A stretch of DNA of 64,000 bases from IMG/VR virus record IMGVR_UViG_3300000553_000004, positions 1 to 64,000 of that record; one strand, given 5' to 3'. The translations under genes were made by a program, and so were the position numbers. Positions 12,403-30,328 of this stretch are shown piece after piece. The notes under the pieces were generated by a model. The model saw nothing but the letters and a program-made list of their open reading frames with translations. It was not told the DNA's origin and ran no database searches. The stretch's first letter is position 1; every line of letters begins with the position of its first letter.

Positions 12403-13185
12403 ATGTATATGTCAATTGAGAATTATTTTGATGTTACAAAGGTAATAATCAGAAAAATAAACAAAAAAATAGCCAAGAATATGATTGTAAAAAATCACTA
12501 TTCTCATAAATGGTCTTTATGCCAAGTGGCTTATGGTGTTTTCTATATTACCAACGAACAATCACCATTCTTCGATAATGTTGGTGAAAAATTGATAGGA
12601 TGTGTTATTTATGGTCAACCTGTGGGTAGGTCTGCGGCCGAATCCATATCAGAACTTATAAAAATCGATGAAGTCTTCGAATTGACTAGATTGTTCATTC
12701 ATGATGGTTATGGTAGAAATATTGAAAGTTATACAATCGGAGAATCTATGAAGATGGTAAAACGAGATTTTCCGAAAATTAGAGCTATAATTTCCTATGC
12801 TGATGGGGAACAAAATCACAAAGGGACGATTTACCAAGCGTCAAACTTCTATTATCAGGGAAATTCATCATTGGCTCTGATGCCTAATTTTTCAATCTCT
12901 TTAAAAGGACAACCATATGAATGGATGCATTCTAGGACGGTTTCTTCTACATATGGTTCTCACAATGTAGACCATATCAAAAAGTGTATAGGACATACGT
13001 TTTGGAGAAAGAAAGAGTCTACTAAACATAGATATGTCTATCTACTTGGGAGTAAAGTTGATAAGAAAAAGATTCTAAAGAATCTTAAACATGACTTTTT
13101 ACCATATCCTAAAGGAAATAATTATAAAGATGAGATTGAAGAAATTGTGGTAGATAACCCAATAGAAAATCCATTCTTTGGGTGA
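12403..13185 (+). CDS. mom: Mom-family (GNAT-fold) DNA adenine modification protein
   Basis: HYSH, FELTRL, RNIES, ISYAD.EQNHKGTIYQASNFYYQG motifs. Confidence 0.8.
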   Translation: MYMSIENYFDVTKVIIRKINKKIAKNMIVKNHYSHKWSLCQVAYGVFYITNEQSPFFDNVGEKLIGCVIYGQPVGRSAAESISELIKIDEVFELTRLFIHDGYGRNIESYTIGESMKMVKRDFPKIRAIISYADGEQNHKGTIYQASNFYYQGNSSLALMPNFSISLKGQPYEWMHSRTVSSTYGSHNVDHIKKCIGHTFWRKKESTKHRYVYLLGSKVDKKKILKNLKHDFLPYPKGNNYKDEIEEIVVDNPIENPFFG

Positions 13186-13221
13186 AGTCTTCATATTTAT
13201 AGTGATATAGACAAGACCGCT

Positions 13222-14052
13222 ATGAATGACATAAACAAATTTAGAAATATCGTCAGAGAATGTATCTCTGAAATTAAGAAGGAATCTAACCCAAAGGAAT
13301 CCCTAAAGGAATCTCTCCGTGGTATTGTACGAAGTGTCTTGAAGGAAGCGTCGACATCGACCAAGCCAGACCATACCAAGGAAGAAAAGGAAACTATTTC
13401 TAAGGGATACGAGAAGGATGGTAATCAACGATTGGATAAGACCAATGACAAACAACAGAAGGAACTTGAGACAATAGTTCATGGAATTGACCCTACTTGG
13501 GAAGCTTATTGGGACGACCATAATCAATTGATTGTACGAGCCCAGAATCTTTTATACGTTCGTATCTGTCCTCAATTTGAAGATAAATATAACGTCGATG
13601 CTATGGTAAAGTTGGTTGATAGAGTTAGAGCTATTGCGTTGTCATGGGAGCAGGTCAAAGCATTTATTAAAGCTAATTTCAGTGATTTGAAGAAAACTAC
13701 TAAGGCTGATGTATTGAAACAGACTTCTTTAGACCACTATAAAGATAGAGATGTAAACAAAAAAGAAGCCGGGCCTCGACATGATATTATAAAAAACAGA
13801 GGTGAGAAGAATAATGGTGAAGATGCTAAGATTAAAAACACCAAAAAATCTGATATGGACTATAACGAACCTCAGACCAAGAGGGACGAAGATATGCCAG
13901 ACCAACCTATGAAAAATGTGACTGACCAAGGTAAAGACCCCGAATTCAAGAACAGGGATATTAAAAAAACGGATAAAGTCAAGCCTCAGAAACATAAAGA
14001 TGATAAAAAACTCAAAGCATCTGATAAAAAGACTCCGAAGTTTAAACGTTAA
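13222..14052 (+). CDS. hypothetical, probable virion-internal protein
   Basis: IVRECISE / IVRSVLKE motifs, charged tail, ATATTTATA at 13193-13201. Confidence 0.6.
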   Translation: MNDINKFRNIVRECISEIKKESNPKESLKESLRGIVRSVLKEASTSTKPDHTKEEKETISKGYEKDGNQRLDKTNDKQQKELETIVHGIDPTWEAYWDDHNQLIVRAQNLLYVRICPQFEDKYNVDAMVKLVDRVRAIALSWEQVKAFIKANFSDLKKTTKADVLKQTSLDHYKDRDVNKKEAGPRHDIIKNRGEKNNGEDAKIKNTKKSDMDYNEPQTKRDEDMPDQPMKNVTDQGKDPEFKNRDIKKTDKVKPQKHKDDKKLKASDKKTPKFKR

Positions 14053-14071
14053 TCGTTTATCTTAAACACTC

Positions 14072-14106
14072 AATAAAACCGTGGTTAATCCCACGGTTTT
14101 TATTTT
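14072..14106. terminator. intrinsic terminator
   Basis: AAAACCGTGG / CCACGGTTTT stem with T-tract. Confidence 0.8.
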
Positions 14107-14110
14107 GCGC

Positions 14111-14227
14111 TTGACTTCTTATATGGATTTGGTATACTCTTGTAAATGGCGCAAAATTCCCGAATGGACAAAATTACCAAGTGTGTAAAAATAGACAGTT
14201 GACATTAAAAGAATTATTTGATATGAT
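14111..14227 (+). promoter_or_regulatory. tandem sigma70-type promoters
   Basis: TTGACT-16-TATACT (14111-14138) and TTGACA-17-TATGAT (14199-14227). Confidence 0.65.
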
Positions 14228-14332
14228 GGGTGTGAAGGTTATCGATAAACAAATTTAAAATGACCTGTGGATTTACGGTAAAATGTTCGATTGTAAATTC
14301 CAAATTTATAGGAACATAAAGGAAAAATAATT

Positions 14333-14740
14333 ATGAACGAAAGAAAAACACAACGAAAAAACAAGACAAAGCAGGTAATTGCGTGGCCCTCACACGATAC
14401 GTATTTTAGTATCGATACTCTAATTGAATCCAATTCCCACATGCTTACTACATCCGGCTCTGATATTACACTTCGAGTTCGATTGAATAAAGCCATCACG
14501 GAAGAAAATCTTGTGGCGGCGATTGGACAAAAGAGTTCCGGTAAAGGTAGACCTCAATTGGTATTCGCTATGAGGCCTGTCAAACAATCTGCCATCGACA
14601 AAGCCACCGCAGATGGAATATCAGTCTCTATGACTAAAATTATGCCTGTCATGGAAATAACATCACAAACGCCTACTCCTATCGTTACACAAGTAACAAA
14701 TATCACTTCCGATAAAACTCAAACAGTTAGTGTTCAATAA
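14333..14740 (+). CDS. hypothetical protein (possible winged-helix DNA binder)
   Basis: 135 aa; KGRPQLVF wing-like motif. Confidence 0.6.
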   Translation: MNERKTQRKNKTKQVIAWPSHDTYFSIDTLIESNSHMLTTSGSDITLRVRLNKAITEENLVAAIGQKSSGKGRPQLVFAMRPVKQSAIDKATADGISVSMTKIMPVMEITSQTPTPIVTQVTNITSDKTQTVSVQ

Positions 14741-14760
14741 CGTTCGATAATACCATACAT

Positions 14761-14958
14761 ATGATTAAAAAGAAAAAGTCAAAGAAACAAAAATCTAGGC
14801 CAATCGATTTACATATGTATGGTATTTTTGACAATAAAAAGAACACAGTCATAAAAATAAGTTTAGAACAGACTGATATTCAGATGGAGATAGCGTTGAT
14901 GGGCGGATTGAAGTCACATCTAGAAGAATGTGAATTCGATATAAAATTAAGTTACTGA
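14761..14958 (+). CDS. hypothetical protein
   Basis: 65 aa basic ORF. Confidence 0.55.
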   Translation: MIKKKKSKKQKSRPIDLHMYGIFDNKKNTVIKISLEQTDIQMEIALMGGLKSHLEECEFDIKLSY

Positions 14959-15468
14959 TGCATTACCCTCAAACATCATAAAAAATTTAAAGGAATTCTT
15001 TATAGTAAAATCTTCTTTGTAGTAGAAAATTGATACTTCTTTTGTTAGATGGTTCATCGTGGCTTGAATTTTTTGATTTGAACCATATACGATAGGCATA
15101 CTAAAATCCGTATCAAATAACACGGACAACACCGGCGTTAATTTAAAATAATGATAGAACTTCTCCGTTTTATTAACATAATGATATCTTAATGGTGGCT
15201 TTGAATGTTTTCCGTTTCCTTTAATGGCAATCGTCTTTTTAGGCCCCTTCTCAAAAAAGTTCTTAGAATTAATTTCATAATAAAATACCATAGAATTTTG
15301 TGGAAGTTTAACTGTTTTTATAATAGCTAAAGACCCTATTATTATAGGCATATCCATTTTCATGTCGAACAGCGCATACGAAGATGAAGTTAATTTAAAA
15401 CAGTGGAAATACGTCGGTGGTATAGTTTTTATAGTCGATTTGTCGTTGACTTTAGTTGTGATTGACAT
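14947..15468 (-). CDS. hypothetical protein with internal duplication
   Basis: Two copies of F(H)xFKLT...LFD...MPI..GS...FYY. Confidence 0.65.
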   Translation of the reverse strand: MSITTKVNDKSTIKTIPPTYFHCFKLTSSSYALFDMKMDMPIIIGSLAIIKTVKLPQNSMVFYYEINSKNFFEKGPKKTIAIKGNGKHSKPPLRYHYVNKTEKFYHYFKLTPVLSVLFDTDFSMPIVYGSNQKIQATMNHLTKEVSIFYYKEDFTIKNSFKFFMMFEGNASVT

Positions 15469-15473
15469 ATAAT
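15446..15473 (+). promoter_or_regulatory. sigma70-type promoter
   Basis: TTGACT-16nt-TATAAT, 8 nt before ATG. Confidence 0.6.
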
Positions 15474-15481
15474 ATAAGTAT

Positions 15482-16783
15482 ATGTCTGATTTTTTTAATC
15501 AACCACGAATTATAACAGAAAAAGATTTTATTTCTACGCTAAATTCCTATGCCAATAAGGCGTGTAGTCCGGCAGGAAAATATGCCCACAATGACGCATT
15601 CAAATCTGTCACAGGAGAGGATGTCTTTAAATTTGAAGAAAATAAAACTAAACTGATTAATGATTTGAATTTCCTGATTAGTTTAGATGTTGAGGAATTT
15701 ACTTTTCGTAAGAAGTGGGAAGAATTGAGAGACATAAATCCATACATTTCTAAAGTCGATGAACAAACCAAAGCCTTAATTTGGGAACCTACTGACATCA
15801 ACAATGAAGAATTGACTATTGAAGAAATCACGAATCTAAAGCCTGTAGTTGTTGTGGTAGATGATACTTTAGAACGTACTTGGACTACTTTGAGATATTA
15901 TTGTAGTAGCGCCGAATACAATCAGGCCCCTGGCCGATTCATTAAATTTCTAATAAGAGATGAAGTTACTACTAAAGTTTTAGGAGTATGTTCTATTGCC
16001 AGTGACGTTATTTCCATATCCGATAGAGATAAGTATATAGGTTGGACTCCTGAAAATAAACTCAAGGATAAGATGTTACGACATTCCGCTATTGGGACTA
16101 CCATCGTTCCGACTCAACCATTCGGTAGTAATTTTCTAGGTGGTAAACTCGTCGCCGCCATGGTCACGTCTGGCGTTGTCCGTAATGAGTGGGAATGTCC
16201 GTCTGGTGGAGATTCCAATCCAGGAAAGCTGGTTGGTATGACGACTACTAGTTTATACGGAAGACCATCGATGTATAATAGTTTAAAATGGTGGACAGAT
16301 GTGGGGGATTCAAAGGGAAAAATACCAATTAAGCCGTATGAAAAATCGTATGAAGCTTGGCATGGTTGGTTAAAACAACATAAAAAGAAAGAATATGAAG
16401 AGGCCATGACACAAAAAGAGGGTATATCAGGCCCAGTCACAGGCGCAAAGATGAGAGTCTTAAATATGATATTTAAGGCGTGTAACGTCAAACAATCTGA
16501 ATACTGTCATGGATATCAGAGAGGGGTATACTATTCTTGTTTTTATGAAAATACAAAAGAATTCCTATGTAATAAAATTACAATGGATAAATTGGTCATG
16601 AAGCCACTATTTAAAGATGACACCAAATCCATAGTGGACTGGTGGAAGCCAAGGGCTATAGAACGATATAAAAAATTAAAAGCGGCCGGACGGTTGAATC
16701 CTGAGAAGCTGTTTTATAATGATATGACTCATATGGAATATGAAGATGCTAAAAAACGTTTCTTTGATGCTGTAGGAAAATAA
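15482..16783 (+). CDS. DUF4338 / DruA-like protein (long form)
   Basis: RDKYIGW, PFGSNFLGGKLVA, TTTSLYGRPSMYN motifs recalled from DruA-like proteins. Confidence 0.7.
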   Translation: MSDFFNQPRIITEKDFISTLNSYANKACSPAGKYAHNDAFKSVTGEDVFKFEENKTKLINDLNFLISLDVEEFTFRKKWEELRDINPYISKVDEQTKALIWEPTDINNEELTIEEITNLKPVVVVVDDTLERTWTTLRYYCSSAEYNQAPGRFIKFLIRDEVTTKVLGVCSIASDVISISDRDKYIGWTPENKLKDKMLRHSAIGTTIVPTQPFGSNFLGGKLVAAMVTSGVVRNEWECPSGGDSNPGKLVGMTTTSLYGRPSMYNSLKWWTDVGDSKGKIPIKPYEKSYEAWHGWLKQHKKKEYEEAMTQKEGISGPVTGAKMRVLNMIFKACNVKQSEYCHGYQRGVYYSCFYENTKEFLCNKITMDKLVMKPLFKDDTKSIVDWWKPRAIERYKKLKAAGRLNPEKLFYNDMTHMEYEDAKKRFFDAVGK

Positions 16784-16789
16784 AAATGG

Positions 16790-17392
16790 TTAAATTAAAA
16801 TCCAACCATATGACGTTTTACTTTTACCTTGTATAAGATTGTTTATAGCTCCTCGACAATAACTAAATTTTTTACAAAAATCATATCGCCTTCCGTAAAA
16901 TATTTCTTCGGATTTAATGTTTTTGAATGTATAGTTAGTTTGGTCTAAATGTTTATTATCATCTATGTTAATTTTTTTGCCCTTCATTGGCGAACGACGT
17001 CCTTTAAGTTTTTTAGATATTTTAAGTTTTGTTTTTTTGGAATGTTTATATCCTAATGTTCCTCCGCCTGTAGCTGAGAAACTTAAATTATAACAAATAT
17101 TACGTCGATTATTTCTAATTTCATTTAAATATTTTTGTTCTTGTTCTACAAGTTTTTCAATTGGTAATTCTTCAATAATAAAAAATTCAAAATTCGACTC
17201 TCCATATTTATTCCAAGCATTTTGGAGATATTTATTTTCGTGATTATTATTTCTAAGACGATTAATGTGTTCTTTCCATCGTCCATACGTTCCTAAAATA
17301 TTATCCGACCTACCGATATAGTATTTTCCGTTAATTTTATTTATAATTTTATAAATTCCACTTATTTTTATATCTTGACAATAGTTATTCAT
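16790..17392 (-). mobile_element. GIY-YIG homing endonuclease (Seg-like, NUMOD tail)
   Basis: SGIYKIINKINGKYYIG, HENKYLQNAWNKYG, EQKYL; ATG at 17392 preferred to the longer ORF call. Confidence 0.88.
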
Positions 17393-17447
17393 AATGATAT
17401 AAATATCAAGTTGTAAGCAGAACATATAGAAAACATGAAATAATAAT

Positions 17448-17609
17448 ATGGGTCGCACATTTCGAAATAATGATAGGTGGAAGAAGGACAAACATGACCA
17501 GAACTTCCGTAACAGTAAGAAATTCAAAGAACTTAAAGATGGTTATATCCATCCAAAGGCAAACTTACCAAAAGTAGACGCAGAACCAATTGAATCCGAT
17601 GATAATTAA
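17448..17609 (+). CDS. small basic protein (53 aa)
   Basis: MGRTFRNNDRWKKDKHDQNFR...; follows TTGACA-17-TATAAA promoter; not in ORF track. Confidence 0.6.
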   Translation: MGRTFRNNDRWKKDKHDQNFRNSKKFKELKDGYIHPKANLPKVDAEPIESDDN

Positions 17610-17838
17610 TATAATTAGTATAGTCTTTTTTCTACTGTTCTCAGTGTGGACTATTTTGTCAGCGTTTTTGATTCGTGGTAACGCCGATAAAATAAAACAA
17701 TTAGACGCTGCCAATAAGAAACTTATAAACGATATAAATTCTTTACAGAGAAATCAGAATATGATAGTATCTTCGTTTAAGGAATTGAATCGTATTATAA
17801 GAAAACATGACAAAGGAACTAAAAAAATCGGTAGATAA
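17599..17838 (+). CDS. small membrane protein with coiled coil
   Basis: N-terminal TM helix. Confidence 0.6.
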   Translation: MIINIISIVFFLLFSVWTILSAFLIRGNADKIKQLDAANKKLINDINSLQRNQNMIVSSFKELNRIIRKHDKGTKKIGR

Positions 17839-18340
17839 ACCTAAGACTCGTAAGAAAAAAGAAGAAGGGACTATAAAGGGGATAGGACTGTTTGACCACA
17901 TCAAACATATACGAACTATTCAAGACCCCGATTATTTTAAAGGTCTTACCGACTTAGATAAGAAGTCTTTTAATCATTTCATGATTTTAAAGTCTTTGAG
18001 TATGAATCCTGAAATTTTGGAAGAAGTTTCTACGTTATTCAAGTATTTTGATAAAATCCCCTCCCCACAATTTTACCAACTAATGATTGGTGGTATAATT
18101 CCACCAGACAATTCTAGAAAATTTTATCCTTGGGTAAAGTCTAAGAAAAAACCATATAACGAAAAGTTAATCGAATTGATTTGTACTTATTTTGAAATCT
18201 CAAGTAGTGAGGCAGTTGAATACGTTTCAATATTATCATTAACTGAGTCAGGTAAAAAAGAATTAGAAGAACTTTGTAGAAATTATGGATTGACTGACAA
18301 AGAAGTCGAATCCGCTTTGAAAGGAAACGATAATGAATAA
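17807..18340 (+). CDS. clamp loader small subunit (T4 gp62-like)
   Basis: FNHFMILKSLSM, KFYPWVKSK, YFEISSSEAVEY pattern. Confidence 0.7.
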   Translation: MTKELKKSVDKPKTRKKKEEGTIKGIGLFDHIKHIRTIQDPDYFKGLTDLDKKSFNHFMILKSLSMNPEILEEVSTLFKYFDKIPSPQFYQLMIGGIIPPDNSRKFYPWVKSKKKPYNEKLIELICTYFEISSSEAVEYVSILSLTESGKKELEELCRNYGLTDKEVESALKGNDNE

Positions 18341-19040
18341 ACCAATTGTAATCGGTGTCGGTGGATTTGCAAGAGCAGGTAAGGATACCTTTGTAAAAGT
18401 TGCACGTAAGATTTTGGAACGGAATGGATATACAACGAGACGATTGGCATTCGCCGATGTTTTAAAAGATGAACTGGCTCCATTCATACAAAATTATTAC
18501 GGTATAAACGTATGGACGGATAACACTGATGAAAAATCGTTGATACGTCCTTTGTTAGTCGCACACGGTTGCCAAAAGAGAATTCAAACGGAGGGTCAAT
18601 ATTGGATTGATAATATTGATAAGGAGATAAATAAGGAAATCGTTCATTATGAATCTTTCACTGAAAGAGATTTGATACAAAAACATGTGATATTCATTAG
18701 TGATTGTAGATTTCCAAATGAGGTGAGTTGGGCACATCAGAAGTGGGGTGGTTGGTTTGTACACTTAAAGAAATATACAAATATACCCCTTTATAGTAAA
18801 ACGGGCGATAGGGATGGTTTATTTAAAAAATATGATGGCGCCCCTAATGAAGAAGAGGCTAAAAATGACCCGATTTGTATGAAAGATGCAGATTCTCGGT
18901 TGGAGTTGGAAAATGTAATCGAACGAGAACTAAGATTAAGTGGTATTAAAATTACTACTGAGTCGTTGGTAGACAATACTTATCTCAATGAAGAGATTAA
19001 ACTATGTCTAACCAAGTGTCCTTTTTTGACTATCCAGTAA
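18333..19040 (+). CDS. deoxynucleoside monophosphate kinase
   Basis: GVGGFARAGKDT P-loop, FADVLK, ISDCRFPNE. Confidence 0.85.
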   Translation: MNKPIVIGVGGFARAGKDTFVKVARKILERNGYTTRRLAFADVLKDELAPFIQNYYGINVWTDNTDEKSLIRPLLVAHGCQKRIQTEGQYWIDNIDKEINKEIVHYESFTERDLIQKHVIFISDCRFPNEVSWAHQKWGGWFVHLKKYTNIPLYSKTGDRDGLFKKYDGAPNEEEAKNDPICMKDADSRLELENVIERELRLSGIKITTESLVDNTYLNEEIKLCLTKCPFLTIQ

Positions 19041-19777
19041 AACCCAATTCATTAATATATTTGGTGGAATGTTCTACACCTGAACAGAATCGATTGTTTA
19101 GGAATACTATTGACAAATATCATAGTTACGTCAAATACAAAGACTCGCCTACTAGAAATATTCGGTGGTTAGTATATGAAGTGGGTAGTGGTAATCATAT
19201 AGGCGCAATAGGATTGTCATCTGCAACTATAGGAGTTAATGTTAGAGATAGTTTTATTGGTTGGGATACTAATACAAAAATTAAAAATCTGTGTCATTTG
19301 GCTAATAATTCTAGATTCTGCTTGGCTACTCCAAATATAACAATTAAAAATTCCGCGTCTTCTACATTAAAACAACTCAGGATTGAAGGAGCCAAACGGT
19401 GGAAGTCTAAATACAATGACGATTTAATCTTATTAGAGACATTTGTTCAACCGGAACGTGCGGAAGACTACAAAGAACATAAATTGAGAAATGGCTCGTG
19501 TTATTTGGCTGATAATTGGACTATGGTAGGAGAAACTCAAGGACATCATATTAGAAAAACTCCTATGAGACTCTGGGAGAAGGAAACCGGCGAAAGGGGT
19601 AGATTGGCTAGGGAACATCCGGAAGAGTGTCTTAAAAAGTATGCCAGCTACTTAGGCGGACATACTGATTCGGGTTATAATGTGACTAAGACGGCCAAGA
19701 AGATTATGTTCTTAAAACCATTAGTTAAAGATTGGAAAGATAGACTTAATCACCTAGTAACAGACGAAAGTAATTGA
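19004..19777 (+). CDS. DUF4338 domain protein (short form)
   Basis: YHSY, RDSFIGW, ANNSRF, KNSAS, LLETFV, GSCYLADNW..VGETQG. Confidence 0.8.
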   Translation: MSNQVSFFDYPVKPNSLIYLVECSTPEQNRLFRNTIDKYHSYVKYKDSPTRNIRWLVYEVGSGNHIGAIGLSSATIGVNVRDSFIGWDTNTKIKNLCHLANNSRFCLATPNITIKNSASSTLKQLRIEGAKRWKSKYNDDLILLETFVQPERAEDYKEHKLRNGSCYLADNWTMVGETQGHHIRKTPMRLWEKETGERGRLAREHPEECLKKYASYLGGHTDSGYNVTKTAKKIMFLKPLVKDWKDRLNHLVTDESN

Positions 19778-20418: not shown

Positions 20419-21678
20419 TTAAGTAGACGCTTTTACTTTTTCGTGAATTTCAAATAAAGCATCTGTACAATACATATCGGAGTCGGGTAGCTTCCTTAAT
20501 TGATTTGTATAATAATTATCATTATTATCTATAATTTTATTTTGAAAGGTCGTTAATCCTCTGATATCGAATGAGAATATATCATATTCAAATGTACCAA
20601 TTTCTCCACTATCTTTGATGATTTTTGCCAGGCTAGTTATGACTGGAAAGTTTTCCTGAGTCAATCGTTTTGAGTCGAATGTCAATAAAATTTCATTAGT
20701 CTTTTCATCTGTCAATTTCTTAACTCTCTTAGTTAAATCGAATGGCGTTCCTGGTTGTATTTTGGATATAAAATCAGTAACATCCAAATCAGTATATACG
20801 GCATTACACCACGGTTCTAACATACCCAATAAATTAGGTGTACAATTATTTACTACGAATCCGATATCATATTTATTTTGTATGATTGGATAACAATTTT
20901 CATCATTTTCAATCCAAGACCCCCATTTACGAAGGTAGTGGGACATATTTTTAGCGCAACATAATTTATAAAACATGTCATCTTTTTTAACTTCCTTAGT
21001 CCATCTATGTCCTCTACAAGTAAAATGATACACAAAAGCATCTCGACTTTGATTGATTTCAAATCCTTTTAAAATCATTCTCTGAAAGATATCACTATCT
21101 TCATAAGGGAATGGCGCAAATAATTTGTCATGCCCTCCGATATCTAAGAAGTCTTGTTTGTACATTGCCCACGGAGCGAAAATTCCTCTTGTAATAACTC
21201 CCTTATTTTCTGGTAATTGTTGTAACTCCTTACAATAATCATAAAACTCCTGTTCTTTGAAATCTTCAACGTATGTTCCAAAGTCTTTGACAATCTTCTC
21301 TTTGCCTGGAGGATGTAATGGCGGCTCAATTCTAGTTGCCGCAACTACCCCATGTGGTTTTAACCACTTCATGATATTTTCGACGTAATTTGGGCCACAG
21401 ACCATATCGGCATGGAAAATGGTAAATATTTCATTCTTTGCCATTTCTATACCTTTATCATAAAGAACCGTATGTCCCACTTGTTTAGTATTATTACGAG
21501 AGTAAACCGTGTTCAAATCACGTATCATTACTTCTGAAATATACCACTCGTCCGTTTCATCTTCCGAATTATCATCAAGAATGATGATTTCTTCGGTTGG
21601 ATAGAATTTACGAATGCTATTATACGCTAGTATTAGGTATGGTAGATTATTTCTTGTTGGTATTATGAATGATATCAT
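20419..21678 (-). CDS. GT2-family glycosyltransferase
   Basis: ISFIIPTRN, ILDDNSED, HADM, YEDSDIFQRM, VYHF. Confidence 0.88.
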   Translation of the reverse strand: MISFIIPTRNNLPYLILAYNSIRKFYPTEEIIILDDNSEDETDEWYISEVMIRDLNTVYSRNNTKQVGHTVLYDKGIEMAKNEIFTIFHADMVCGPNYVENIMKWLKPHGVVAATRIEPPLHPPGKEKIVKDFGTYVEDFKEQEFYDYCKELQQLPENKGVITRGIFAPWAMYKQDFLDIGGHDKLFAPFPYEDSDIFQRMILKGFEINQSRDAFVYHFTCRGHRWTKEVKKDDMFYKLCCAKNMSHYLRKWGSWIENDENCYPIIQNKYDIGFVVNNCTPNLLGMLEPWCNAVYTDLDVTDFISKIQPGTPFDLTKRVKKLTDEKTNEILLTFDSKRLTQENFPVITSLAKIIKDSGEIGTFEYDIFSFDIRGLTTFQNKIIDNNDNYYTNQLRKLPDSDMYCTDALFEIHEKVKAST

Positions 21679-21680
21679 AT

Positions 21681-22535
21681 CTATTGATTGTAAAATTTTT
21701 GTATTAACGTGTTTAATTCTAAATCCGAAATTTTTTGTTTTTCTCTAATTTTTATGGACAGTAATGGTTTAATATAATTTTGATATTTTAAAAATTTATT
21801 ACCTGATTCTGTCACCACAATATTTTTTAAAATGTATTGTGATGTGTTATATTTTTTTGCCGTGTGTATTAAATATGTATCGTCGGGACCATACGAACCC
21901 ATTTCTTCCGGAAATTTTATTTTTTTTAATAACGATGATTTTATAAGATTAAACCAACCCGCTCCCATTTTAATATGGTCATTTCTAAATACGGACACTT
22001 CGATATCATTGAATTCATAATCTAAAGAAAATAAATCGAAATTGTCTCTATGATTATGTGATTCTTTCAAAAATTTTTCATTTACTATACAATCCCACGA
22101 ATCGTCCCAATATTTTATAATTTGTGGGGTTAGAATAAAATAATCGTCCTTAATTTTTGATGCGGCGTCTATCATATATGGTAGAGTTAAATGTGAAAAA
22201 TACACATCAGAATCTAACCAAATTATAAAGTCCTGTTCTTTATCGCACGTATCTCTTTTTTTATCTATAGCCCCCTGTATCATTTCATTTGTATCGAAAT
22301 TTACTGAGAAATAGTAAGACAATTTCATTTTAAGATAATTGAATTTATCTATAAAGTAATTTTTTGATATTTTACTATAGTTCCAATCGATTAACTTATC
22401 TGACACGTTCATTGTAATATCGAATATGACAGAATTATTTTTGATGTAATATGAAGATTCTATGTGTTTATTAACTTGACGTTCCAATTCGTCTATTTCC
22501 CACGGTTGTATATATTGGACAATTCTAAATATCAT
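21681..22535 (-). CDS. GT-A fold glycosyltransferase
   Basis: IWLDSD DxD motif, YGPDDT. Confidence 0.7.
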   Translation of the reverse strand: MIFRIVQYIQPWEIDELERQVNKHIESSYYIKNNSVIFDITMNVSDKLIDWNYSKISKNYFIDKFNYLKMKLSYYFSVNFDTNEMIQGAIDKKRDTCDKEQDFIIWLDSDVYFSHLTLPYMIDAASKIKDDYFILTPQIIKYWDDSWDCIVNEKFLKESHNHRDNFDLFSLDYEFNDIEVSVFRNDHIKMGAGWFNLIKSSLLKKIKFPEEMGSYGPDDTYLIHTAKKYNTSQYILKNIVVTESGNKFLKYQNYIKPLLSIKIREKQKISDLELNTLIQKFYNQ

Positions 22536-23320
22536 ACTAATACAATTTCATGTTTCTGAACCAACCATTCAGGAATATACAAACCACTAACATCTTTATC
22601 TTTGTAATTTGGCCCAAACCAAGGGTCGGGTATTATAATTTTTCCTTTTTTATCATTGAGATAACCGCCCCACCAAGCGAATGTGGAGTTGGATAAAATT
22701 AAATTTTTCATTTGAGTCATCATGTATAATTGAACGAATGGATTGCCTTCAACATATACAATTTCATCAAATTCATTTTCTGTACATATATTATTTTTAC
22801 ACCAAGGAATATCATCACTGAATATGAAAATTTGATTAACATCTAAAATTTCACTAAAAGCATCGGCATAATATTTCATTGAAAGGACGCAGTGATTATG
22901 TTGAAGTGGAATGTAATCTCCCCGTCTTACACTTATACCAAGACTATTCTCCGTTATTTTATATTTTGACGTCTGGTCTACAATTTCATTCTTAAACTTG
23001 AAATATTTGTTGATTAATTTATCTCTAATATTGTCAAAATATTTATATGATTGATAGAAACCATGTAATTCCAAATCATCCTTCACATCGACGGGAATAT
23101 AATCAAATGTAGCTTGGTTGAATGTGTTTGGTAGGAGTATATCTTGAAATTTGAAATCATAATCAAACCCACTCATGTCGGAGTTTATATCTCCCCTATG
23201 ACCGGCATGTGATTTAGTTGGTAATACGAAATCTGAACCGACCCGTTCCGCTACTTCTATGGTAGTCGCAGTCTGAAACATGTTGTTTCCTAATCTGCCC
23301 ATGAATTTACAACTTATCAT
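22532..23320 (-). CDS. GT11 alpha-1,2-fucosyltransferase-like protein
   Basis: GRLGNNMFQ, GFYQSYKYF, SVRRGDY, FSDDIPWC, SNSTFAWWG. Confidence 0.9.
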   Translation of the reverse strand: MISCKFMGRLGNNMFQTATTIEVAERVGSDFVLPTKSHAGHRGDINSDMSGFDYDFKFQDILLPNTFNQATFDYIPVDVKDDLELHGFYQSYKYFDNIRDKLINKYFKFKNEIVDQTSKYKITENSLGISVRRGDYIPLQHNHCVLSMKYYADAFSEILDVNQIFIFSDDIPWCKNNICTENEFDEIVYVEGNPFVQLYMMTQMKNLILSNSTFAWWGGYLNDKKGKIIIPDPWFGPNYKDKDVSGLYIPEWLVQKHEIVLV

Positions 23321-23946
23321 ATAGAAGCTTCACGTTTTTTAATTACACATAGACTTTTGTAAAAATGAATATATTCCATATGATGTTCAAAGTATGATAG
23401 AGATTGTTCGCCTATTTCTTTAGTTCCAACAAAACTCTTACCATTCAACATTACATCATCGACCAACCCCTTTAGAAAATTCACTCCGGTTTGCGTTCCG
23501 CCCGCCCAATTGTTAGCATACGACGTGTGGAGGTCTTCTATGAAATAAAGCCCGCCTGGCTTTAATAGGGGGAATGCCGTACGGAATGTGATTATTTGAT
23601 GATTCCAAGCATGGCTACCATCATCTATAATAATTGATAATGGGGCGTTTTCCTTGGCAATTGTATATAACAAAACTTCATCTGTTTGTGACCCGATATA
23701 AACCCTCTTACGTCCACCGGCATATTTGGCGCAGTCTGGATTGATATCCAATCCAATGATATTAGAAAACGGACAATAAGCTTCCCATAATTTTAATGAC
23801 TCTCCCTCAAACACTCCTATTTCTAGGAAGTTCATTGTATCATTTTTTAATTTTAAAAGATAATCATCATAGATTTCGGTATATTCATGACTACCAATTC
23901 CTTTATCCGTATTAAAATTCTTAGCTAATTCCGATAGTTGTTTCAT
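23317..23946 (-). CDS. class I SAM-dependent (sugar O-)methyltransferase
   Basis: TDKG..H.Y, LEIGV, IIIDDGSH, YFIED. Confidence 0.85.
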   Translation of the reverse strand: MKQLSELAKNFNTDKGIGSHEYTEIYDDYLLKLKNDTMNFLEIGVFEGESLKLWEAYCPFSNIIGLDINPDCAKYAGGRKRVYIGSQTDEVLLYTIAKENAPLSIIIDDGSHAWNHQIITFRTAFPLLKPGGLYFIEDLHTSYANNWAGGTQTGVNFLKGLVDDVMLNGKSFVGTKEIGEQSLSYFEHHMEYIHFYKSLCVIKKREASI

Positions 23947-24839
23947 AGTTGTATTAAATGTTTTAGTTTATTTTTATCAATGTTTGGTGGGTATGTCACG
24001 AACTGATATTCATTATGAGCTGGCCAAAATCCCCACTTTTTGAAGAAATTCTGAGCTCCTCTTTGTTCATATATTTTTGAACGGTCTGACCGTACAATTT
24101 CATCTGTAGGAAAGTTACTTTTATCCGAACGACTTCCAAAATGAAACACGACGGAATTTGTGGTCGTTATGAATTTTAATCCCGCTAATTGCATACGAAT
24201 AAATAAATCGGCATCTTCCCAGTATGCTGGAGCATAAATTGGGTCATTTCCTCCGAAATAATCCCAATCAGATTTACGAACCAATCCAGATACACCCTCC
24301 CCTTTATTGACTTCAACATCAGGATTTAGTTTAGAAAATTCTTCTGCGTAGTAGATGAATGTCGGGTCATCAAAATCGTCATATTTGTATCCAAAGAATT
24401 CATATGGAAAGAAACAAGTTCCAGGTCTATCATCTTCCTTGAAACAATTGGGTTGGAATCTTTGAGAACTTACCCACAAACTTTCATTTGGATACTTTTC
24501 AAACACTTTAAGACAGTTCAAATCCCAATTTCTAGAAACAAACATATCAGCGTGTAAGAACATGATATACTCCGTTTTGACGTGTTTGGCGCACTCATTC
24601 ATACCACCACCAATACCCTTGGTTTTTTCTTCCGAATTATCTTCATTAAACCAACTTAAATTATATTTTTCTGTATTCTTAACTAACCACTCATACGTCC
24701 CATCTGTACAATTTTCTGCAAAGATAATAAGAGGAGCGTCCTTAAAATGTGAGTATGTTCGCACGGAATGAATTGCCAATTTGAGATAATTCAAATTGTT
24801 ACAACATCCTATACAAAATGAGATTGGGGATTTATTCAT
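23943..24839 (-). CDS. GT2-family glycosyltransferase
   Basis: ENCTDGT, HADM, WEDADLFIRM, VFHFGS; paralog of 20419. Confidence 0.85.
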   Translation of the reverse strand: MNKSPISFCIGCCNNLNYLKLAIHSVRTYSHFKDAPLIIFAENCTDGTYEWLVKNTEKYNLSWFNEDNSEEKTKGIGGGMNECAKHVKTEYIMFLHADMFVSRNWDLNCLKVFEKYPNESLWVSSQRFQPNCFKEDDRPGTCFFPYEFFGYKYDDFDDPTFIYYAEEFSKLNPDVEVNKGEGVSGLVRKSDWDYFGGNDPIYAPAYWEDADLFIRMQLAGLKFITTTNSVVFHFGSRSDKSNFPTDEIVRSDRSKIYEQRGAQNFFKKWGFWPAHNEYQFVTYPPNIDKNKLKHLIQL

Positions 24840-25465
24840 AACACCATTCTATCTCGTTTTAACCAGAAAGAATCGGATTGAGTTCCACGTAGTAATACAA
24901 ACATTATTTCGACATATCCATGAGCATTTAACCATTCTTTTACTTCTTGATATAAAGATTGACCTTTCCAAAATTCTTTATGTTCTAATTCGATTTGAAG
25001 TGATTGTAATTTATCTAAATGATTCCCAAATGATTTCAATACATTTAATGCTGCGCCTTCCACGTCTATTTTGGCAATGTCTATAGTCTGTAGTCCTGTA
25101 GATTCTATGAATTCATCCATTCTTACACAATCCACCGATATGATATCATTTTTATTTCCTTCCGTTCTTTCTAATAAAGAGGATGCTCCTGTATTTTCTT
25201 TTTCAATACAAAAATTTGCAACGCCAGATATGTCACTGACTGCGTTGTTATATAGATTCATATTAGGATAATCTCTAAGTATATTCGTAGCTGAATCTGG
25301 ATTTGGTTCAAATATGTAACATGAACTATCGGACAATTGAAATGAATTAGCCAATGATTTAGCATCATGACCATCTCTACTACCAATCTCAATTATATTT
25401 TTTGGTATTATATTAGAGTGTTCTCTAATTCCGAGATTGATAAAATTTAAATCGTATCGCCACAT
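24836..25465 (-). CDS. FkbM-family methyltransferase
   Basis: IEIGS, FEPNP, NNAVSD, KIDVEGA. Confidence 0.88.
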   Translation of the reverse strand: MWRYDLNFINLGIREHSNIIPKNIIEIGSRDGHDAKSLANSFQLSDSSCYIFEPNPDSATNILRDYPNMNLYNNAVSDISGVANFCIEKENTGASSLLERTEGNKNDIISVDCVRMDEFIESTGLQTIDIAKIDVEGAALNVLKSFGNHLDKLQSLQIELEHKEFWKGQSLYQEVKEWLNAHGYVEIMFVLLRGTQSDSFWLKRDRMVL

Positions 25466-25468
25466 ATT

Positions 25469-26275
25469 TTAATATTTTACTGGTAGTCCTGATGAAGATT
25501 GCATTACTACGCCTAAGTAGTTATGTGACCAATGTTCTTCTGTATACCCCTGTTGTTTAAATTGTTGATATTCTGGAAGGTAATGAAACACCTTGAATAT
25601 CGGTTCTATCGGCCACAACTCAATTGGCTTCTTAACCAACAACCATTCACCATACCAAGTAAATTCACTTGATATTGTATTTATCAATCCATCAAAAGTC
25701 AAGTTATTTGGTTTAATATATTCTTCCTCCAAACTTCGCCAAACTTTTGAAGACCAAATGACAGGAACAGGCCCAAAATCATACAACCTACCTTTCCTAT
25801 CAAATAATTCTTGAATTGGAGTTCTACACTCGGCGAACGATGCTTGTGGGTCATATCCAAGATACTGGTCTTTATATTTTACAGTCCATTGGAATAAATC
25901 TTTTTGTTCATGCATCACCGTATATGGGATTGAATCGGTTACAAGAAAGTCCTTATAATAGAAGTCTTTTATAAAATAAGAATCTGAATCTAATACTACA
26001 TAATTTTCGGTTTGAATGGTTTTCCAAAATATCATCTTAACAATTTGTTGATTCTTCCACGATTGACATAAAGATTCATGTATAAGTTCTTCATCATGTA
26101 TAAGATAGTATCCATCGGAACCTAACTTAGATTTGAACAATTGAAAATCTTCTTTTGGAACTGAGATATATAATGGTATTTTATCTTTATTATGTTTGAC
26201 GCTAGATTCCAAGAGTAATTTACATCTCTCAACATCACGACTAAATGATTTACAATATAGAACTAATTTATTCAT
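25469..26275 (-). CDS. GT-like protein (DUF6492-like)
   Basis: WKNQQIVK, VLDSDSYF DxD motif. Confidence 0.65.
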   Translation of the reverse strand: MNKLVLYCKSFSRDVERCKLLLESSVKHNKDKIPLYISVPKEDFQLFKSKLGSDGYYLIHDEELIHESLCQSWKNQQIVKMIFWKTIQTENYVVLDSDSYFIKDFYYKDFLVTDSIPYTVMHEQKDLFQWTVKYKDQYLGYDPQASFAECRTPIQELFDRKGRLYDFGPVPVIWSSKVWRSLEEEYIKPNNLTFDGLINTISSEFTWYGEWLLVKKPIELWPIEPIFKVFHYLPEYQQFKQQGYTEEHWSHNYLGVVMQSSSGLPVKY

Positions 26276-27002
26276 ATTTATATCCCATCGATTTAGATTT
26301 TAACTGATTCACCCTATCAGTTAATCCCGCTTCCATAAAATGTTTATCCATTTCTTGTTGGGCAAGTATATTATAATTTGACATATTAGGATTGTCTTTT
26401 ATTGTACCGTTTCCAATGTGAACTATAGGTAACCAATCACAAACTCCAATTTTCCAATTATTATCTTCGCATATTATACCTGTCATTAAATCTTGAACCC
26501 ATCCGTATTTACTACCAAATCCACCCACTTTCTGTGCGAATTCTCGTTTCATAAGCGCACATTGATAATCCACGAATGGAACGGTTCGTAATTCTGTAGA
26601 ATTCCAACAATGCATCTGTTTCCAGAAACATTGATTTTTCTCAGGTTGAATAACGCACGGCGACACTATCATTAAATCATCACGTTTAAACAACTGTTCT
26701 TTTAAAGTTTTAATGAAATTATAACCGTGAATTATTAAATCTGAATTTAATAGAACGAATGAATCGTAGTCAGTATTTTCTAAAAATAATTGAATGGACA
26801 TGTCTAACCCACCGCCATAACATACATTTTCTTCTACTCTATATGTGGTATATTTACTAGATTTACCTACATCACTACCGTTGTCTATGACTATCAAATC
26901 ATAATCGTCATGTTCATATGGTTTTAACATCTCATACAAATTATCAGTATAATGTATTGTATTGTAATGTAATATGGCAACTAAAGTTTTATTCATAATC
27001 AT
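26268..27002 (-). CDS. GT2-like glycosyltransferase
   Basis: VIDNGS, ENVCYGGG, LLNSD. Confidence 0.8.
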   Translation of the reverse strand: MIMNKTLVAILHYNTIHYTDNLYEMLKPYEHDDYDLIVIDNGSDVGKSSKYTTYRVEENVCYGGGLDMSIQLFLENTDYDSFVLLNSDLIIHGYNFIKTLKEQLFKRDDLMIVSPCVIQPEKNQCFWKQMHCWNSTELRTVPFVDYQCALMKREFAQKVGGFGSKYGWVQDLMTGIICEDNNWKIGVCDWLPIVHIGNGTIKDNPNMSNYNILAQQEMDKHFMEAGLTDRVNQLKSKSMGYKYE

Positions 27003-27598
27003 TTTCTGTAAACAAACATAACATCATCGGACCTGTTTTTTAACTTACGAGTGTCAATGATTTCTACTTCTGGATTTAACGCCTTTAATAGAACTTCATC
27101 TTTATCCAAATCCTGAACATCTTCTATGATGTACAATCCTCCTTTTTTTAATTTAGGAAAATAAATTGGAAATCTTAAAACTTGATGCTCTACTTCATGA
27201 CTGGCGTCGTCTATGATTATATCAAATTCTAAATTTGAGAAATATTTATCTATGATGGACGCATCATTTGCGTCGTATATGATGGGGGTGACATCCTCCG
27301 AAAATTTAAGGGCATTTCTATTATCTATACCATAGATATTGGCTTTATCAAAATACGCTCTCCATAATGCTAAACTATATCCAAAGTCGATTCCTATTTC
27401 TAGTATATTTATTTGTTTATTTCGATATGGTTTTAATAATTTAGCATAACTATCTACATATGCGTGAGTAGTTCCTTTGTCAGTTTTATATCCAAGATTT
27501 AAAACTGCTTCGTAAATTTCTTGAAACGTTTTATTATTATCAACGATATCTTTGATTTTCGGTTTATATGCGGTTTGATTTATAATCCATTCACTCAT
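26999..27598 (-). CDS. class I SAM-dependent methyltransferase
   Basis: TDKGTTH.Y, LEIGI, IIIDDASH; paralog of 23317. Confidence 0.85.
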   Translation of the reverse strand: MSEWIINQTAYKPKIKDIVDNNKTFQEIYEAVLNLGYKTDKGTTHAYVDSYAKLLKPYRNKQINILEIGIDFGYSLALWRAYFDKANIYGIDNRNALKFSEDVTPIIYDANDASIIDKYFSNLEFDIIIDDASHEVEHQVLRFPIYFPKLKKGGLYIIEDVQDLDKDEVLLKALNPEVEIIDTRKLKNRSDDVMFVYRK

Positions 27599-28272: not shown

Positions 28273-28274
28273 GA

Positions 28275-29618: not shown

Positions 29619-29620
29619 AA

Positions 29621-30295: not shown

Positions 30296-30328
30296 ATAAA
30301 ACCTATTATATCTAATTTAACTAATTTT

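What the first reader, a model, noticed from the sequence alone, without database searches (positions are those of the whole stretch)
12403..19777. Three distinct Mom/DUF4338-type proteins within 7.5 kb: candidate multi-enzyme DNA hypermodification or anti-defence set
Seen: a Mom-like protein (12403), a long DruA-like protein (15482) and a short DUF4338 protein (19004). All share an N-terminal H/Y-S segment, a run of hydrophobic strands, and the Mom and short DUF4338 proteins share a late G.CY/IY.A.N(W/F)...G motif. Established: Mu Mom is a GNAT-fold adenine modifier; DUF4338 is the DruA component of Druantia defence. Inference: the three are divergent paralogous acyl/carbamoyl-methyl transferases acting on different bases or contexts, a pathway not described as a unit to my knowledge.
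Basis: inference. Interest (0 to 1): 0.7.

Follow-up and report, generated by a model that had tools for sequence, protein, structure and literature searches.

The report
Mom and DruA-type enzymes in jumbo phage
A large freshwater phage carries, inside its DNA-replication gene block, three anciently diverged relatives of the phage Mu DNA-modifying enzyme Mom; one keeps Mom's catalytic residues under the 'DruA/DUF4338' label and another is a full-length copy of the bacterial defence protein DruA, which links these two families and suggests how the uncharacterised one may work.

Summary
All three ORFs are real and correctly placed. They are a Mom homologue (12403-13185), a full-length DruA homologue (15482-16783) and a short DUF4338 protein (19004-19777). 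Both DUF4338 proteins are predicted to have a GNAT fold, and Mu Mom (PDB 8bv8) is their nearest solved structure.

With diverse profiles, the short DUF4338 family aligns to Mom at E 1.9e-13. The alignment superposes Mom's functionally important His/Tyr, Arg111, Ser124 and Tyr159. Of 101 diverse DUF4338 proteins, 39 also hit Pfam Mom and none hits any other GNAT family.

The long protein is a structural orthologue of the founding Druantia type I DruA (E 1.2e-15, full length). Like true DruA, it lacks those Mom-type residues.

The set is not an operon. The genes are dispersed in a T4-like replication module, but the order is kept in about 36-40 related viral contigs. A complete 365 kb relative has six such genes, and the window's own genome has a fourth.

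Best reading: these are parallel nucleic-acid acyl/aminoacyl-transferases serving anti-restriction. Mom and the short DUF4338 are probably active. The orphan DruA's role is unclear. No biochemistry was done, so function is inferred.

The parts
12403..13185 (+). Mom homologue (P0001, 260 aa). It has a GNAT core and the beta6-beta7 insertion at about residues 154-208. It keeps H32/Y33, R96, S109 and Y144, which correspond to Mu H58/Y59, R111, S124 and Y159.
   Evidence: Pfam Mom E 7e-46 and PHROG 1384. phmmer to PDB 8bv8 gives E 3.5e-9, and the residue map comes from that alignment. There are 701 metagenomic homologues.
13222..14052 (+). Conserved ORF of unknown function (276 aa), immediately downstream of Mom and syntenic with it.
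   Evidence: No Pfam, PHROG or PADLOC hit. The protein atlas gave nothing usable. tblastn finds it next to Mom in most related loci.
14333..14740 (+). Conserved small ORF (135 aa), function unknown, syntenic.
   Evidence: No family hit. Present in most related loci.
14947..15468 (-). Conserved ORF (173 aa), function unknown, divergent from the DruA gene.
   Evidence: No significant family hit. Syntenic in related loci.
15482..16783 (+). Full-length DruA homologue (P0002, 433 aa). Layout: N-terminal helical domain 1-118, GNAT core about 119-355, C-terminal helices. It has the DruA-type motifs 'RD..IGW', 'QPFG.N.LGGKL' and 'TTSLYG..S.YN.LK.W'. It lacks the Mom-type His/Tyr, Arg and Ser.
16790..17527 (-). 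GIY-YIG/NUMOD3 homing endonuclease inserted between the DruA gene and the clamp-loader gene. It is a mobile passenger, not part of the set.
   Evidence: Pfam GIY-YIG and NUMOD3, PHROG 314. A full copy occurs only in near-identical contigs. Elsewhere there are about 28-aa remnants or nothing.
17807..18340 (+). gp62-like clamp-loader small subunit. It is first in a translationally coupled string with the next two genes.
   Evidence: PHROG 225 E 4e-13. In cyanophage S-SM2 the DruA homologue also sits directly upstream of gp62.
18333..19040 (+). dNMP kinase. Its start overlaps the stop of the gp62-like gene by 8 nt, and its stop overlaps the start of the short DUF4338 gene by 37 nt.
   Evidence: PHROG 139 E 6e-14. 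Coordinates.
19004..19777 (+). Short DUF4338 protein (P0003, 257 aa). It is a GNAT core with a two-helix beta6-beta7 insertion. It keeps H40/Y42, R104, N116/S119, T146-F147 and Y167..N171-W172, which align with Mom's key residues.

Best explanation
The three genes encode three old, separately conserved lineages of one GNAT branch, Mom plus DUF4338/DruA. A clade of freshwater jumbo myophages of about 215-365 kb with T4-like replisome genes carries them as fixed parts of its replication and nucleotide-metabolism module. Each genome has 4-6 such genes.

What is shown:
- Common fold and ancestry of the three proteins.
- The short DUF4338 family is the sequence bridge between Mom and DruA and keeps Mom's functionally important residues.
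- The long protein is a full-length orphan DruA.
- Gene order is conserved across related contigs.

What is inferred:
- The Mom homologue modifies adenine N6 in double-stranded phage DNA after replication, using an aminoacyl-tRNA donor. In Mu this is Gly-tRNA(Gly), giving 6-NcmdA. The result would be protection from restriction.
- The short DUF4338 protein is a second active enzyme with Mom-like chemistry, acyl or aminoacyl transfer from an ester donor to a nucleic-acid amine. It would differ in donor, base or sequence context. It is co-translated with the dNMP kinase and the clamp-loader subunit.
- The long DruA homologue has a glycine-rich beta4-alpha3 loop instead of Mom's Asn..Ser. It either uses another donor such as acyl-CoA or is a non-catalytic nucleic-acid-binding protein. 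Its role is separate from Mom's.
- The enzymes act in parallel, as a layered anti-restriction and anti-defence repertoire, not as steps of one pathway.
For: Family membership.

Fold:
- P0003 and P0002 AF2 models have pLDDT 78 and 86.

Sequence bridge:
- Diverse DUF4338 profile versus diverse Mom profile: probability 98.0%, E 1.9e-13. The alignment superposes H/Y, R111, S124 and Y159.
- Most of these positions are kept in 96-98% of 118 representatives; Y42 is kept in 86% and N116 in 71%.
- 39 of 101 diverse DUF4338 proteins also hit Pfam Mom, and none hits another GNAT family.
- One DUF4338/Mom pair is detectable by plain BLASTP, E 8e-4.

DruA identity of P0002:
- Foldseek E 1.2e-15, full length, to P0DW34.
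- Alignment with DruA of two DruABCDE operons.
- DruA-type versus short-type profiles: 99.3%, E 1e-20.

Conservation:
- 36 of 41 related loci with enough upstream DNA keep the long gene, the gp62-like gene and the short gene in order; dNMP kinase was detected at about 30 of them. Mom lies 9-11 kb upstream in at least 18 of 27 loci.
- A 100% complete 365 kb relative has 3 Mom-family and 3 DruA-family genes.
- A second, distant phage lineage (L051, L052) also has Mom and a short DUF4338 within 2-4 kb.

Mom mechanism and key residues: PMC13219725.

The genome encodes two tRNA-Gly genes just beyond the window. This is circumstantial.
Against: No biochemical or sequencing-signal evidence for any modification. 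All public runs holding this phage are short-read contigs.

For the Mom homologue, Mu R151 was reported essential but is not conserved in P0001. It is E136 by alignment, with H139/K140 nearby. The 'H.G.IYQA' form is typical of most Mom homologues.

GNAT enzymes with the same fold act on proteins, tRNAs and small molecules. Shared residues do not fix the acceptor. The Mom authors themselves state that substrates could not be predicted from structure.

The long DruA type lacks the Mom residues and occurs in cyanophages and pelagiphages without Mom or the short type. Its inclusion in a 'modification set' is weak.

Co-occurrence within one clade can be explained by descent alone.
Confidence: 0.55

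Rival explanations
1. Only the Mom homologue modifies DNA. The two DUF4338 proteins are GNAT acyltransferases with non-DNA targets, such as host or phage proteins, aminoacyl-tRNAs (as in AtaT/TacT-type toxins) or small molecules. They would serve host takeover or regulation of replication and translation.
For: The GNAT fold is promiscuous in acceptor. The Aravind group reads the DUF4338 domain fused to DndF as a co-effector that may target proteins (PMC10853773). The short gene is co-translated with replication genes rather than with Mom. The long type occurs without Mom in cyanophages.
Against: The short family shares with Mom exactly the residues that distinguish Mom from CoA-dependent GNATs, namely Arg on beta4 and Asn..Ser in place of the pyrophosphate loop. 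About a quarter of diverse DUF4338 proteins are fused to DDE transposases, which is a DNA context. Mom and the short DUF4338 co-locate in a second phage lineage.
Confidence: 0.22
2. The long protein is a counter-defence decoy. As an orphan DruA copy it would bind or titrate DruB-E of the host's Druantia type I system, or mimic its signal. It would have nothing to do with DNA modification.
For: It matches the founding DruA structurally over the full length, including the non-catalytic N- and C-terminal parts. No DruE hallmark (MZB/DUF1998) is found in the window's genome or in a complete relative.
Against: It sits at a fixed place in the replisome cluster, upstream of gp62, from marine cyanophages to this freshwater clade, at only 24-32% identity. 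This looks like an old, stable function rather than a patchy arms-race gene. DruA-model hits were nearly absent in 301 genomes of one candidate host phylum, but the host is unknown.
Confidence: 0.12
3. One reading: the three enzymes form one sequential hypermodification pathway that builds a single complex base.
For: Conserved co-occurrence in one clade and a second lineage with Mom and a short DUF4338 close together. A dNMP kinase is translationally coupled to the short gene.
Against: The genes are not adjacent. They are separated by unrelated replication genes and a homing endonuclease. Each family occurs alone in other phages. Mu Mom needs no partner enzyme (PMC13219725). All three would catalyse the same type of step, acyl transfer, which is unusual for a linear pathway.
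Confidence: 0.08

Closest known systems
Bacteriophage Mu Mom (PDB 8bv8; Pfam PF25680): a Gly-tRNA(Gly)-dependent GNAT that makes 6-NcmdA on dsDNA
   Same: P0001 is a family member (E 7e-46). It has the beta6-beta7 insertion and H/Y, R111, S124 and Y159 equivalents. P0003 shares the fold, an insertion at the same place and the same residues. Mom is the top solved structure for both P0003 and P0002.
   Different: P0001 is about 28% identical to Mu-type Mom and lacks Mu R151. There is no Com-like regulator gene upstream. P0003 carries the DUF4338-specific 'RD..IGW' motif between beta3 and beta4, which Mom lacks, and it does not reach the Pfam Mom threshold. P0002 lacks the key residues. No activity was measured for any of them.
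DruA of Druantia type I (Swiss-Prot P0DW34; PADLOC DruA1; DruABCDE operons on P. putida pKF715A and N. watsonii pNWAT01)
   Same: P0002 matches over the full length in structure and shares the motifs 'GR..(Y/F)L', 'RD..IGW', 'LGGKL' and 'TTS..G..S.YN.LK'.
   Different: About 24% identity. It is an orphan: no druB-E and no DruE-type helicase hallmark in the genome or in a complete relative. It is encoded in a phage replisome cluster, not a defence island. P0003 matches DruA only through the shared core (E 4e-10; PADLOC E 2.5e-6 over residues 27-99).
DruA-like / 'putative cytoplasmic protein' (T4-like GC 1216) of marine T4-like cyanophages and pelagiphages (S-SM2, S-PRM1, S-SCSM2R ORF152, Mosig EXVC030M, HTVC008M)
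   Same: These are orthologues of P0002 at 26-32% identity with the same motifs. In S-SM2 the gene has the same position directly upstream of gp62. They were already noted as DruA-like (Phold preprint) or as structurally Mom-like (PMC12801897).
   Different: Those phages have no detectable Mom or short DUF4338. The present clade combines all three types and multiplies them.
Broad DUF4338 family in bacteria and archaea (2,844 clusters at 50% identity), including transposase fusions and the DndF N-terminal domain
   Same: P0003 carries the family's near-invariant residues.
   Different: P0003 belongs to a stand-alone subfamily of about 250 aa, seen here mainly on large uncultured viral contigs, with its own C-terminal extension. 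It is absent from isolate phages.

Membership tests
Mom family (PF25680), tested for P0001 | Scores above the curated Pfam threshold over the whole domain | tested here: met
   156.8 bits against a cut-off of 27.1, covering profile positions 2-202 of 202.
Mom family (PF25680), tested for P0001 | Residues needed for Mu Mom activity: R111, S124, R151; also H58, Y59, Y159 | tested here: inconclusive
   R96, S109, H32, Y33 and Y144 are present. The R151 position is E136, as in most non-Mu Mom homologues, which have 'H.G.IYQA'.
Mom family (PF25680), tested for P0001 | HTH-like insertion between beta6 and beta7, essential in Mu | tested here: met
   An insertion of about 55 residues (154-208) aligns with Mu 166-210. 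The second Mom-like gene of the genome lacks it.
Mom family (PF25680), tested for P0001 | tRNA-dependent formation of 6-NcmdA on dsDNA | not testable with these tools
   Needs expression with LC-MS, or an in vitro assay.
Mom family, tested for P0003 and P0002 | Recognised by the Mom profile | tested here: not met
   Neither protein hits PF25680 at E <= 0.1. They are relatives of Mom, not members. The P0003 family reaches Mom only profile to profile.
DUF4338/DruA Pfam family (PF14236) | Scores above the curated threshold | tested here: met
   P0002 83.5 bits and P0003 77.5 bits, against a cut-off of 27.
Druantia type I DruA, tested for P0002 | Full-length DruA architecture: N-terminal helical domain, GNAT core, C-terminal helices | tested here: met
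   Foldseek to P0DW34: query 48-433 against 8-392, TM 0.64/0.68, E 1.2e-15. PADLOC DruA1 E 4e-19. Alignment with operon-encoded DruA.
Druantia type I system | druA followed by druB, druC, druD and the large DruE helicase | tested here: not met
   Neighbours are a homing endonuclease, a clamp-loader gene and a dNMP kinase. No MZB/DUF1998 hallmark in G000 or in the complete relative G307. Contrast the operons.
Druantia type I DruA, tested for P0003 | Full-length DruA architecture and DruA-type motifs (LGGKL, TTS..G) | tested here: not met
   Only the core matches (PADLOC E 2.5e-6 over residues 27-99). It has NNSRF, N..S and ETF instead of the DruA-type motifs.
GNAT superfamily | GNAT fold | tested here: met
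GNAT superfamily | Acyl-CoA pyrophosphate-binding loop Q/R-x-x-G-x-G/A | tested here: inconclusive
   P0001 and P0003 have Asn..Ser at this place. P0002 has a glycine-rich 'QPFGSNFLGGK' loop that resembles the canonical motif. This was judged by eye, and no binding test was done.

The most novel reading that the evidence does not exclude
DUF4338/DruA proteins in general are Mom-type nucleic-acid modifiers. The short, Mom-like subfamily would transfer aminoacyl or acyl groups from charged tRNA to DNA bases. DruA would be the writing or marking module of Druantia type I, occupying the place that the DruM methylase holds in type II. Phages such as this one would then carry orphan copies to write the same or competing marks on their own DNA, so a jumbo phage with 4-6 such enzymes would display several previously unseen aminoacyl-derived DNA modifications.
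Probability: 0.15. Interest if true: 0.85.

Novelty: new variant of a known kind. Interest (0 to 1): 0.55.

Why it matters
DruA is the first gene of Druantia type I, and DUF4338 is a large family of at least 2,844 clusters at 50% identity. Neither has a known activity.

This work shows that the short DUF4338 type is the specific sister of Mom and keeps the residues that Mom needs for tRNA-dependent DNA aminoacylation. That gives a concrete biochemical hypothesis that can be tested with the assays just published for Mom.

The phage clade offers natural material for such tests. It has up to six members per genome, including Mom with and without the essential insertion, a short DUF4338 and one or two DruA copies. 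It may therefore hold new DNA modifications useful for restriction-resistant DNA.

If the DUF4338 proteins turn out not to act on DNA, the finding reduces to a family expansion of GNAT enzymes in a jumbo phage, which is of modest interest.

Tried and rejected
- hhalign with shallow clade-only alignments (Neff about 1.9) did not link Mom to either DUF4338 protein (E 0.14 and 0.19). The link appeared only with diverse profiles. DruA-type versus Mom stayed non-significant even then, so that relation rests on structure and on the short family as intermediate.
- megablast of the region against isolate phages gave no match. tblastn of P0003 against isolate phages also gave no match.
- The T4 late-promoter motif TATAAATA is not enriched: 14 found against 11.3 expected, with none placed upstream of the three genes. 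Expression timing could not be inferred.
- Public reads: only short-read freshwater metagenome contigs hold the phage. No modification signal could be sought, and read laying was not used.
- The protein atlas gave nothing for the conserved ORF next to Mom.
- The genome-contig scan with the long-type alignment returned only phage-like contigs binned into MAGs. A DruA-model search of 301 genomes of one phylum gave one partial hit. Bona fide DruA operons were finally obtained from plasmids.
- PADLOC scan of ten mid-length DUF4338 representatives: only one gave a weak, partial DruA-model hit (E 6e-7) and none resembled true DruA. The short-type relatives are therefore a different subfamily.
- Complex prediction was not used, because no protein-protein binding is claimed.
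- An alternative genetic code was considered because the genome has a tRNA(CUA). It was rejected for this region, since all ORFs are open under table 11.

Full report
**What is in the sequence**

The window is the first 64 kb of a 214.7 kb IMG/VR viral contig that CheckV rates 62% complete. It was assembled from freshwater metagenomes.

- P0001 (12403-13185, 260 aa) is a clear Mom-family protein: Pfam PF25680 E 7e-46 and PHROG 1384 'Mom-like DNA modification protein' E 1e-49.
- P0002 (15482-16783, 433 aa) exceeds the Pfam DruA/DUF4338 threshold with E 2e-23.
- P0003 (19004-19777, 257 aa) does so with E 1e-21.

The genes between and around them are a T4-like replication and nucleotide-metabolism module.
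- gp32-like gene, a RecA/UvsX-type recombinase, a 5'-3' exonuclease (RNase H-like), a DnaB-like (gp41-type) helicase and the ribonucleotide reductase large subunit lie upstream.
- A gp62-like clamp-loader subunit (17807-18340) and a dNMP kinase (18333-19040) overlap each other by 8 nt. The kinase overlaps the start of P0003 by 37 nt.
- A GIY-YIG homing endonuclease lies on the opposite strand (16790-17527).
- Three conserved ORFs have no recognisable family: 13222-14052, 14333-14740 and 14947-15468(-).

A fourth family member lies outside the window at about 196 kb. It is a second Mom-like gene, 46% identical to P0001 over the core, but it lacks the beta6-beta7 insertion.

**Are the three related, and how?**

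Pairwise BLASTP links only the two DUF4338 proteins (E 4e-8 over 61 residues). Mom gives nothing against either. Clade-only alignments A1, A2 and A3 confirm the DUF4338 pair (hhalign 97.5%, E 6e-12) but not the link to Mom.

Structure prediction with these alignments gave usable models: P0003 with pLDDT 78 and P0002 with pLDDT 86. Both have the GNAT fold.
- For P0003 the best of 350,542 PDB chains is Mu Mom, 8bv8 (Foldseek E 9e-7). Generic GNATs start at 2e-5.
- The margins in Z are modest. The extra 30-40 aligned residues fit a shared insertion between beta6 and beta7.

I then built diverse profiles.
- A whole-library HMM search with A1 found 2,844 DUF4338 clusters at 50% identity. I aligned 118 of them.
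- I assembled 17 diverse Mom proteins: a Mu-type Mom from PhiR68_1, phages of Polaribacter, Listeria, Proteus, Vibrio and Arthrobacter, the archaeal virus HGTV-1, and the clade's own.
- hhalign of these two profiles gives probability 98.0% and E 1.9e-13 over 127 columns.

The alignment puts the following residues in register.

| P0003 | P0001 | Mu Mom |
|---|---|---|
| H40 / Y42 | H32 / Y33 | H58 / Y59 |
| R104 | R96 | R111 |
| N116 / S119 | N106 / S109 | S124 (the serine) |
| T146-F147 | S131-Y132 | not mapped |
| Y167..N171-W172 | Y144..N148-F149 | Y159 (the tyrosine) |

According to Silva et al. 2026 (PMC13219725), R111 and S124 are essential, and H58, Y59 and Y159 are important for Mom activity. 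Mapping Mu numbering onto the 8bv8 chain (offset 9) was checked through the S124A mutation, which is visible in the chain.

Most of these positions are kept in 96-98% of the 118 diverse DUF4338 representatives; Y42 (86%), N116 (71%), F147 (66%) and N171 (64%) are less strictly conserved.

As a specificity control I scanned 101 diverse DUF4338 proteins against all of Pfam. Of these, 99 hit DruA, 39 also hit Mom (best E 1.8e-11), and none hit any other GNAT family. In one distant viral contig a DUF4338 protein and a Mom protein are even detectable by plain BLASTP (E 8e-4).

The DUF4338 family, in its short Mom-like form, is therefore the specific sister of Mom and not just another GNAT.

**The long protein is a true DruA and differs**

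P0002 matches the PADLOC DruA1 model (E 4e-19 over 250 positions), whereas P0003 matches it only marginally.

Against Swiss-Prot AlphaFold models, P0002 aligns over its whole length with the founding DruA of E. coli UMEA 4076-1 (P0DW34): E 1.2e-15, TM 0.64/0.68, and every other hit has E > 0.009. P0003 matches the same entry through the core only (E 4e-10).

I fetched two bona fide DruABCDE operons, from P. putida pKF715A and N. watsonii pNWAT01. In the alignment, P0002, its pelagiphage and cyanophage homologues and the operon DruA proteins share 'RD..IGW', 'LGGKL' and 'TTS..G..S.YN.LK'.

At the positions of Mom's His/Tyr, Arg and Ser they have Ser/Ser, a gap or Thr, and Gly. The beta4-alpha3 loop is glycine-rich ('QPFG.N.LGGK'). 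To my eye this recalls the acyl-CoA pyrophosphate loop of classical GNATs. That is an inference and was not tested.

DruA-type and short-type profiles are strongly related (99.3%, E 1e-20). DruA-type versus Mom is not significant at the sequence level.

The three window proteins thus form a chain: Mom, then short DUF4338, then DruA.

**Conservation and context**

A scan of IMG/VR with A1 gave 58 loci. tblastn of the window's proteins on them shows a conserved order in relatives down to about 52% identity:

Mom, orf13222, ..., orf14333, orf14947(-), DruA-long, (homing endonuclease), gp62-like, dNMP kinase, DUF4338-short.

- The long gene is present in 36 of 41 loci with enough upstream DNA; dNMP kinase was detected at about 30 of those 36.
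- Mom lies within 10 kb in 18 of 27 loci with full flanks. In one more case it lies just outside the flank.
- Whole-record searches give the counts below.

| Record | Size | CheckV completeness | DruA-family genes | Mom-family genes |
|---|---|---|---|---|
| G307 | 365 kb | 100% | 3 (two DruA-type, one short) | 3 (two with the insertion, one without) |
| G308 | 279 kb | 79% | 2 | 2 |
| G306 | 123 kb | 41% | 2 | 1 |
| G304 | 124 kb | 45% (fragment) | 1 (short) | 0 |
| G305 | 96 kb | 27% (fragment) | 1 (short) | 0 |

- None of G000, G307 and G308 has the MZB/DUF1998 hallmark of DruE. The phage DruA copies are therefore orphans.
- Isolate phages have the long type only in marine T4-like cyanophages and pelagiphages, at 26-32% identity. 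In S-SM2 it lies between gp44 and gp62, the same side of gp62 as here. Those phages have no detectable Mom or short type.
- Conversely, a second, distant viral lineage (L051, L052) has a short DUF4338 and one or two Mom genes within 2-4 kb.
- The nearest isolate by recombinase is Microcystis phage Mel-JY01, at 47% identity.
- The genome encodes 19 tRNAs, among them two tRNA-Gly genes 1.4 kb beyond the window end. This is suggestive given Mom's donor, but tRNA-Gly is common in phages.

**Interpretation**

Shown:
- The proteins share fold and ancestry.
- The short DUF4338 type conserves Mom's key residues.
- P0002 is a DruA.
- The genes are orphans, syntenic, and multiplied across the clade.

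Inferred:
- P0001 modifies adenine in dsDNA using an aminoacyl-tRNA, as Mu Mom and two metagenomic homologues do (PMC13219725).
- P0003 catalyses the same type of transfer with another specificity.
- P0002 does something else.

The arrangement argues for parallel enzymes rather than a pathway. The genes are dispersed, each family occurs alone elsewhere, and Mu Mom needs no partner.

The rivals are scored in their own section.

**Comparison with the literature held**

- DUF4338 was called a GNAT domain in passing by Aravind's group (PMC10853773).
- DruA-like proteins in six Synechococcus phages were noted by the Phold authors.
- One cyanophage paper labelled the P0002 homologue 'methylcarbamoylase mom' from structural similarity (PMC12801897).
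- No paper in the searchable library mentions DruA or DUF4338 together with Mom.
- I found none that describes the residue-level correspondence, the split of DUF4338 into a Mom-like type and a DruA-type subfamily, or the 4-6-gene repertoire of this phage clade. The library is incomplete, so this is absence in what was searched.

**Verdict**

The parts are known families, while the link between them and the repertoire are new. This is a new variant of a known kind, with interest 0.55.

Noticed in passing
window 20419-33900 (- strand): About 14 co-directional genes. Most are glycosyltransferases: three GT2, a GT11 fucosyltransferase-like gene at 22532-23320, and GT1/GT4 genes at 28275-29702 and 30329-31810, the latter also hitting 'GT4-conflict'. 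The cluster also has methyltransferases (FkbM 24836-25465; 23317-23946) and DUF6492. It is a glycan-building cluster directly abutting the short DUF4338 gene. Whether it acts on host surface, virion proteins or DNA is unknown.
   Followed up: partly
window 16790-17527 (-): A GIY-YIG/NUMOD3 homing endonuclease is inserted between the DruA gene and the gp62-like gene. A full copy occurs only in near-identical contigs (L005, L006). Other relatives show about 28-aa remnants or nothing, so it looks like a recently mobile element.
   Followed up: partly
window 3500-4444 (+): A second homing-endonuclease-like ORF (NUMOD3 plus weak Vsr/MTES-type nuclease hits) lies between the recombinase and the 5'-3' exonuclease (RNase H-like) genes.
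   Followed up: no
G000 contig about 195.9-196.8 kb (L004:1105-2007, -): A second Mom-like gene (300 aa). It has the Mom core with the H/Y, Arg, Ser and Tyr residues, but it lacks the beta6-beta7 insertion that is essential in Mu Mom, and it has a C-terminal extension of about 130 aa. An insertion-less 181-aa orthologue exists in the complete relative G307.
   Followed up: partly
G000 contig 64.5-65.7 kb, 200.7 kb and 207.8-213.4 kb: 19 tRNA genes, including tRNA-Gly(UCC) and tRNA-Gly(GCC) just past the window end. There is also a tRNA with anticodon CUA (amber-reading) and a tmRNA. ORFs in the window are open under table 11.
   Followed up: no
Protein representatives P0363-P0512: About a quarter of 101 diverse DUF4338 proteins are fused to DDE transposase domains (Tn5-like, IS66, DDE_5). 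Two carry LAGLIDADG domains. This recurrent link between the domain and mobile DNA is not explained.
   Followed up: no
L051 (6291-10330) and L052 (1892-8212): Smaller, distant viral contigs also place a short DUF4338 gene within 2-4 kb of one or two Mom-like genes. The L052 DUF4338 and Mom proteins are 23% identical over 138 residues (BLASTP E 8e-4).
   Followed up: partly
L037-L039, L042, L043 (records G304, G305): A sub-clade keeps the gp62-like gene, the dNMP kinase and the short DUF4338 string, but shows no DruA-long gene and no Mom in the DNA available. The records are 27-45% complete fragments, so loss cannot be told from incompleteness.
   Followed up: partly
G000 contig 76166-77017 (+): A canonical-looking ThyA family gene (Pfam Thymidylat_synt E 1e-86, full length). 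No ThyX was found. It was not examined for hydroxymethylase-type substitutions.
   Followed up: no
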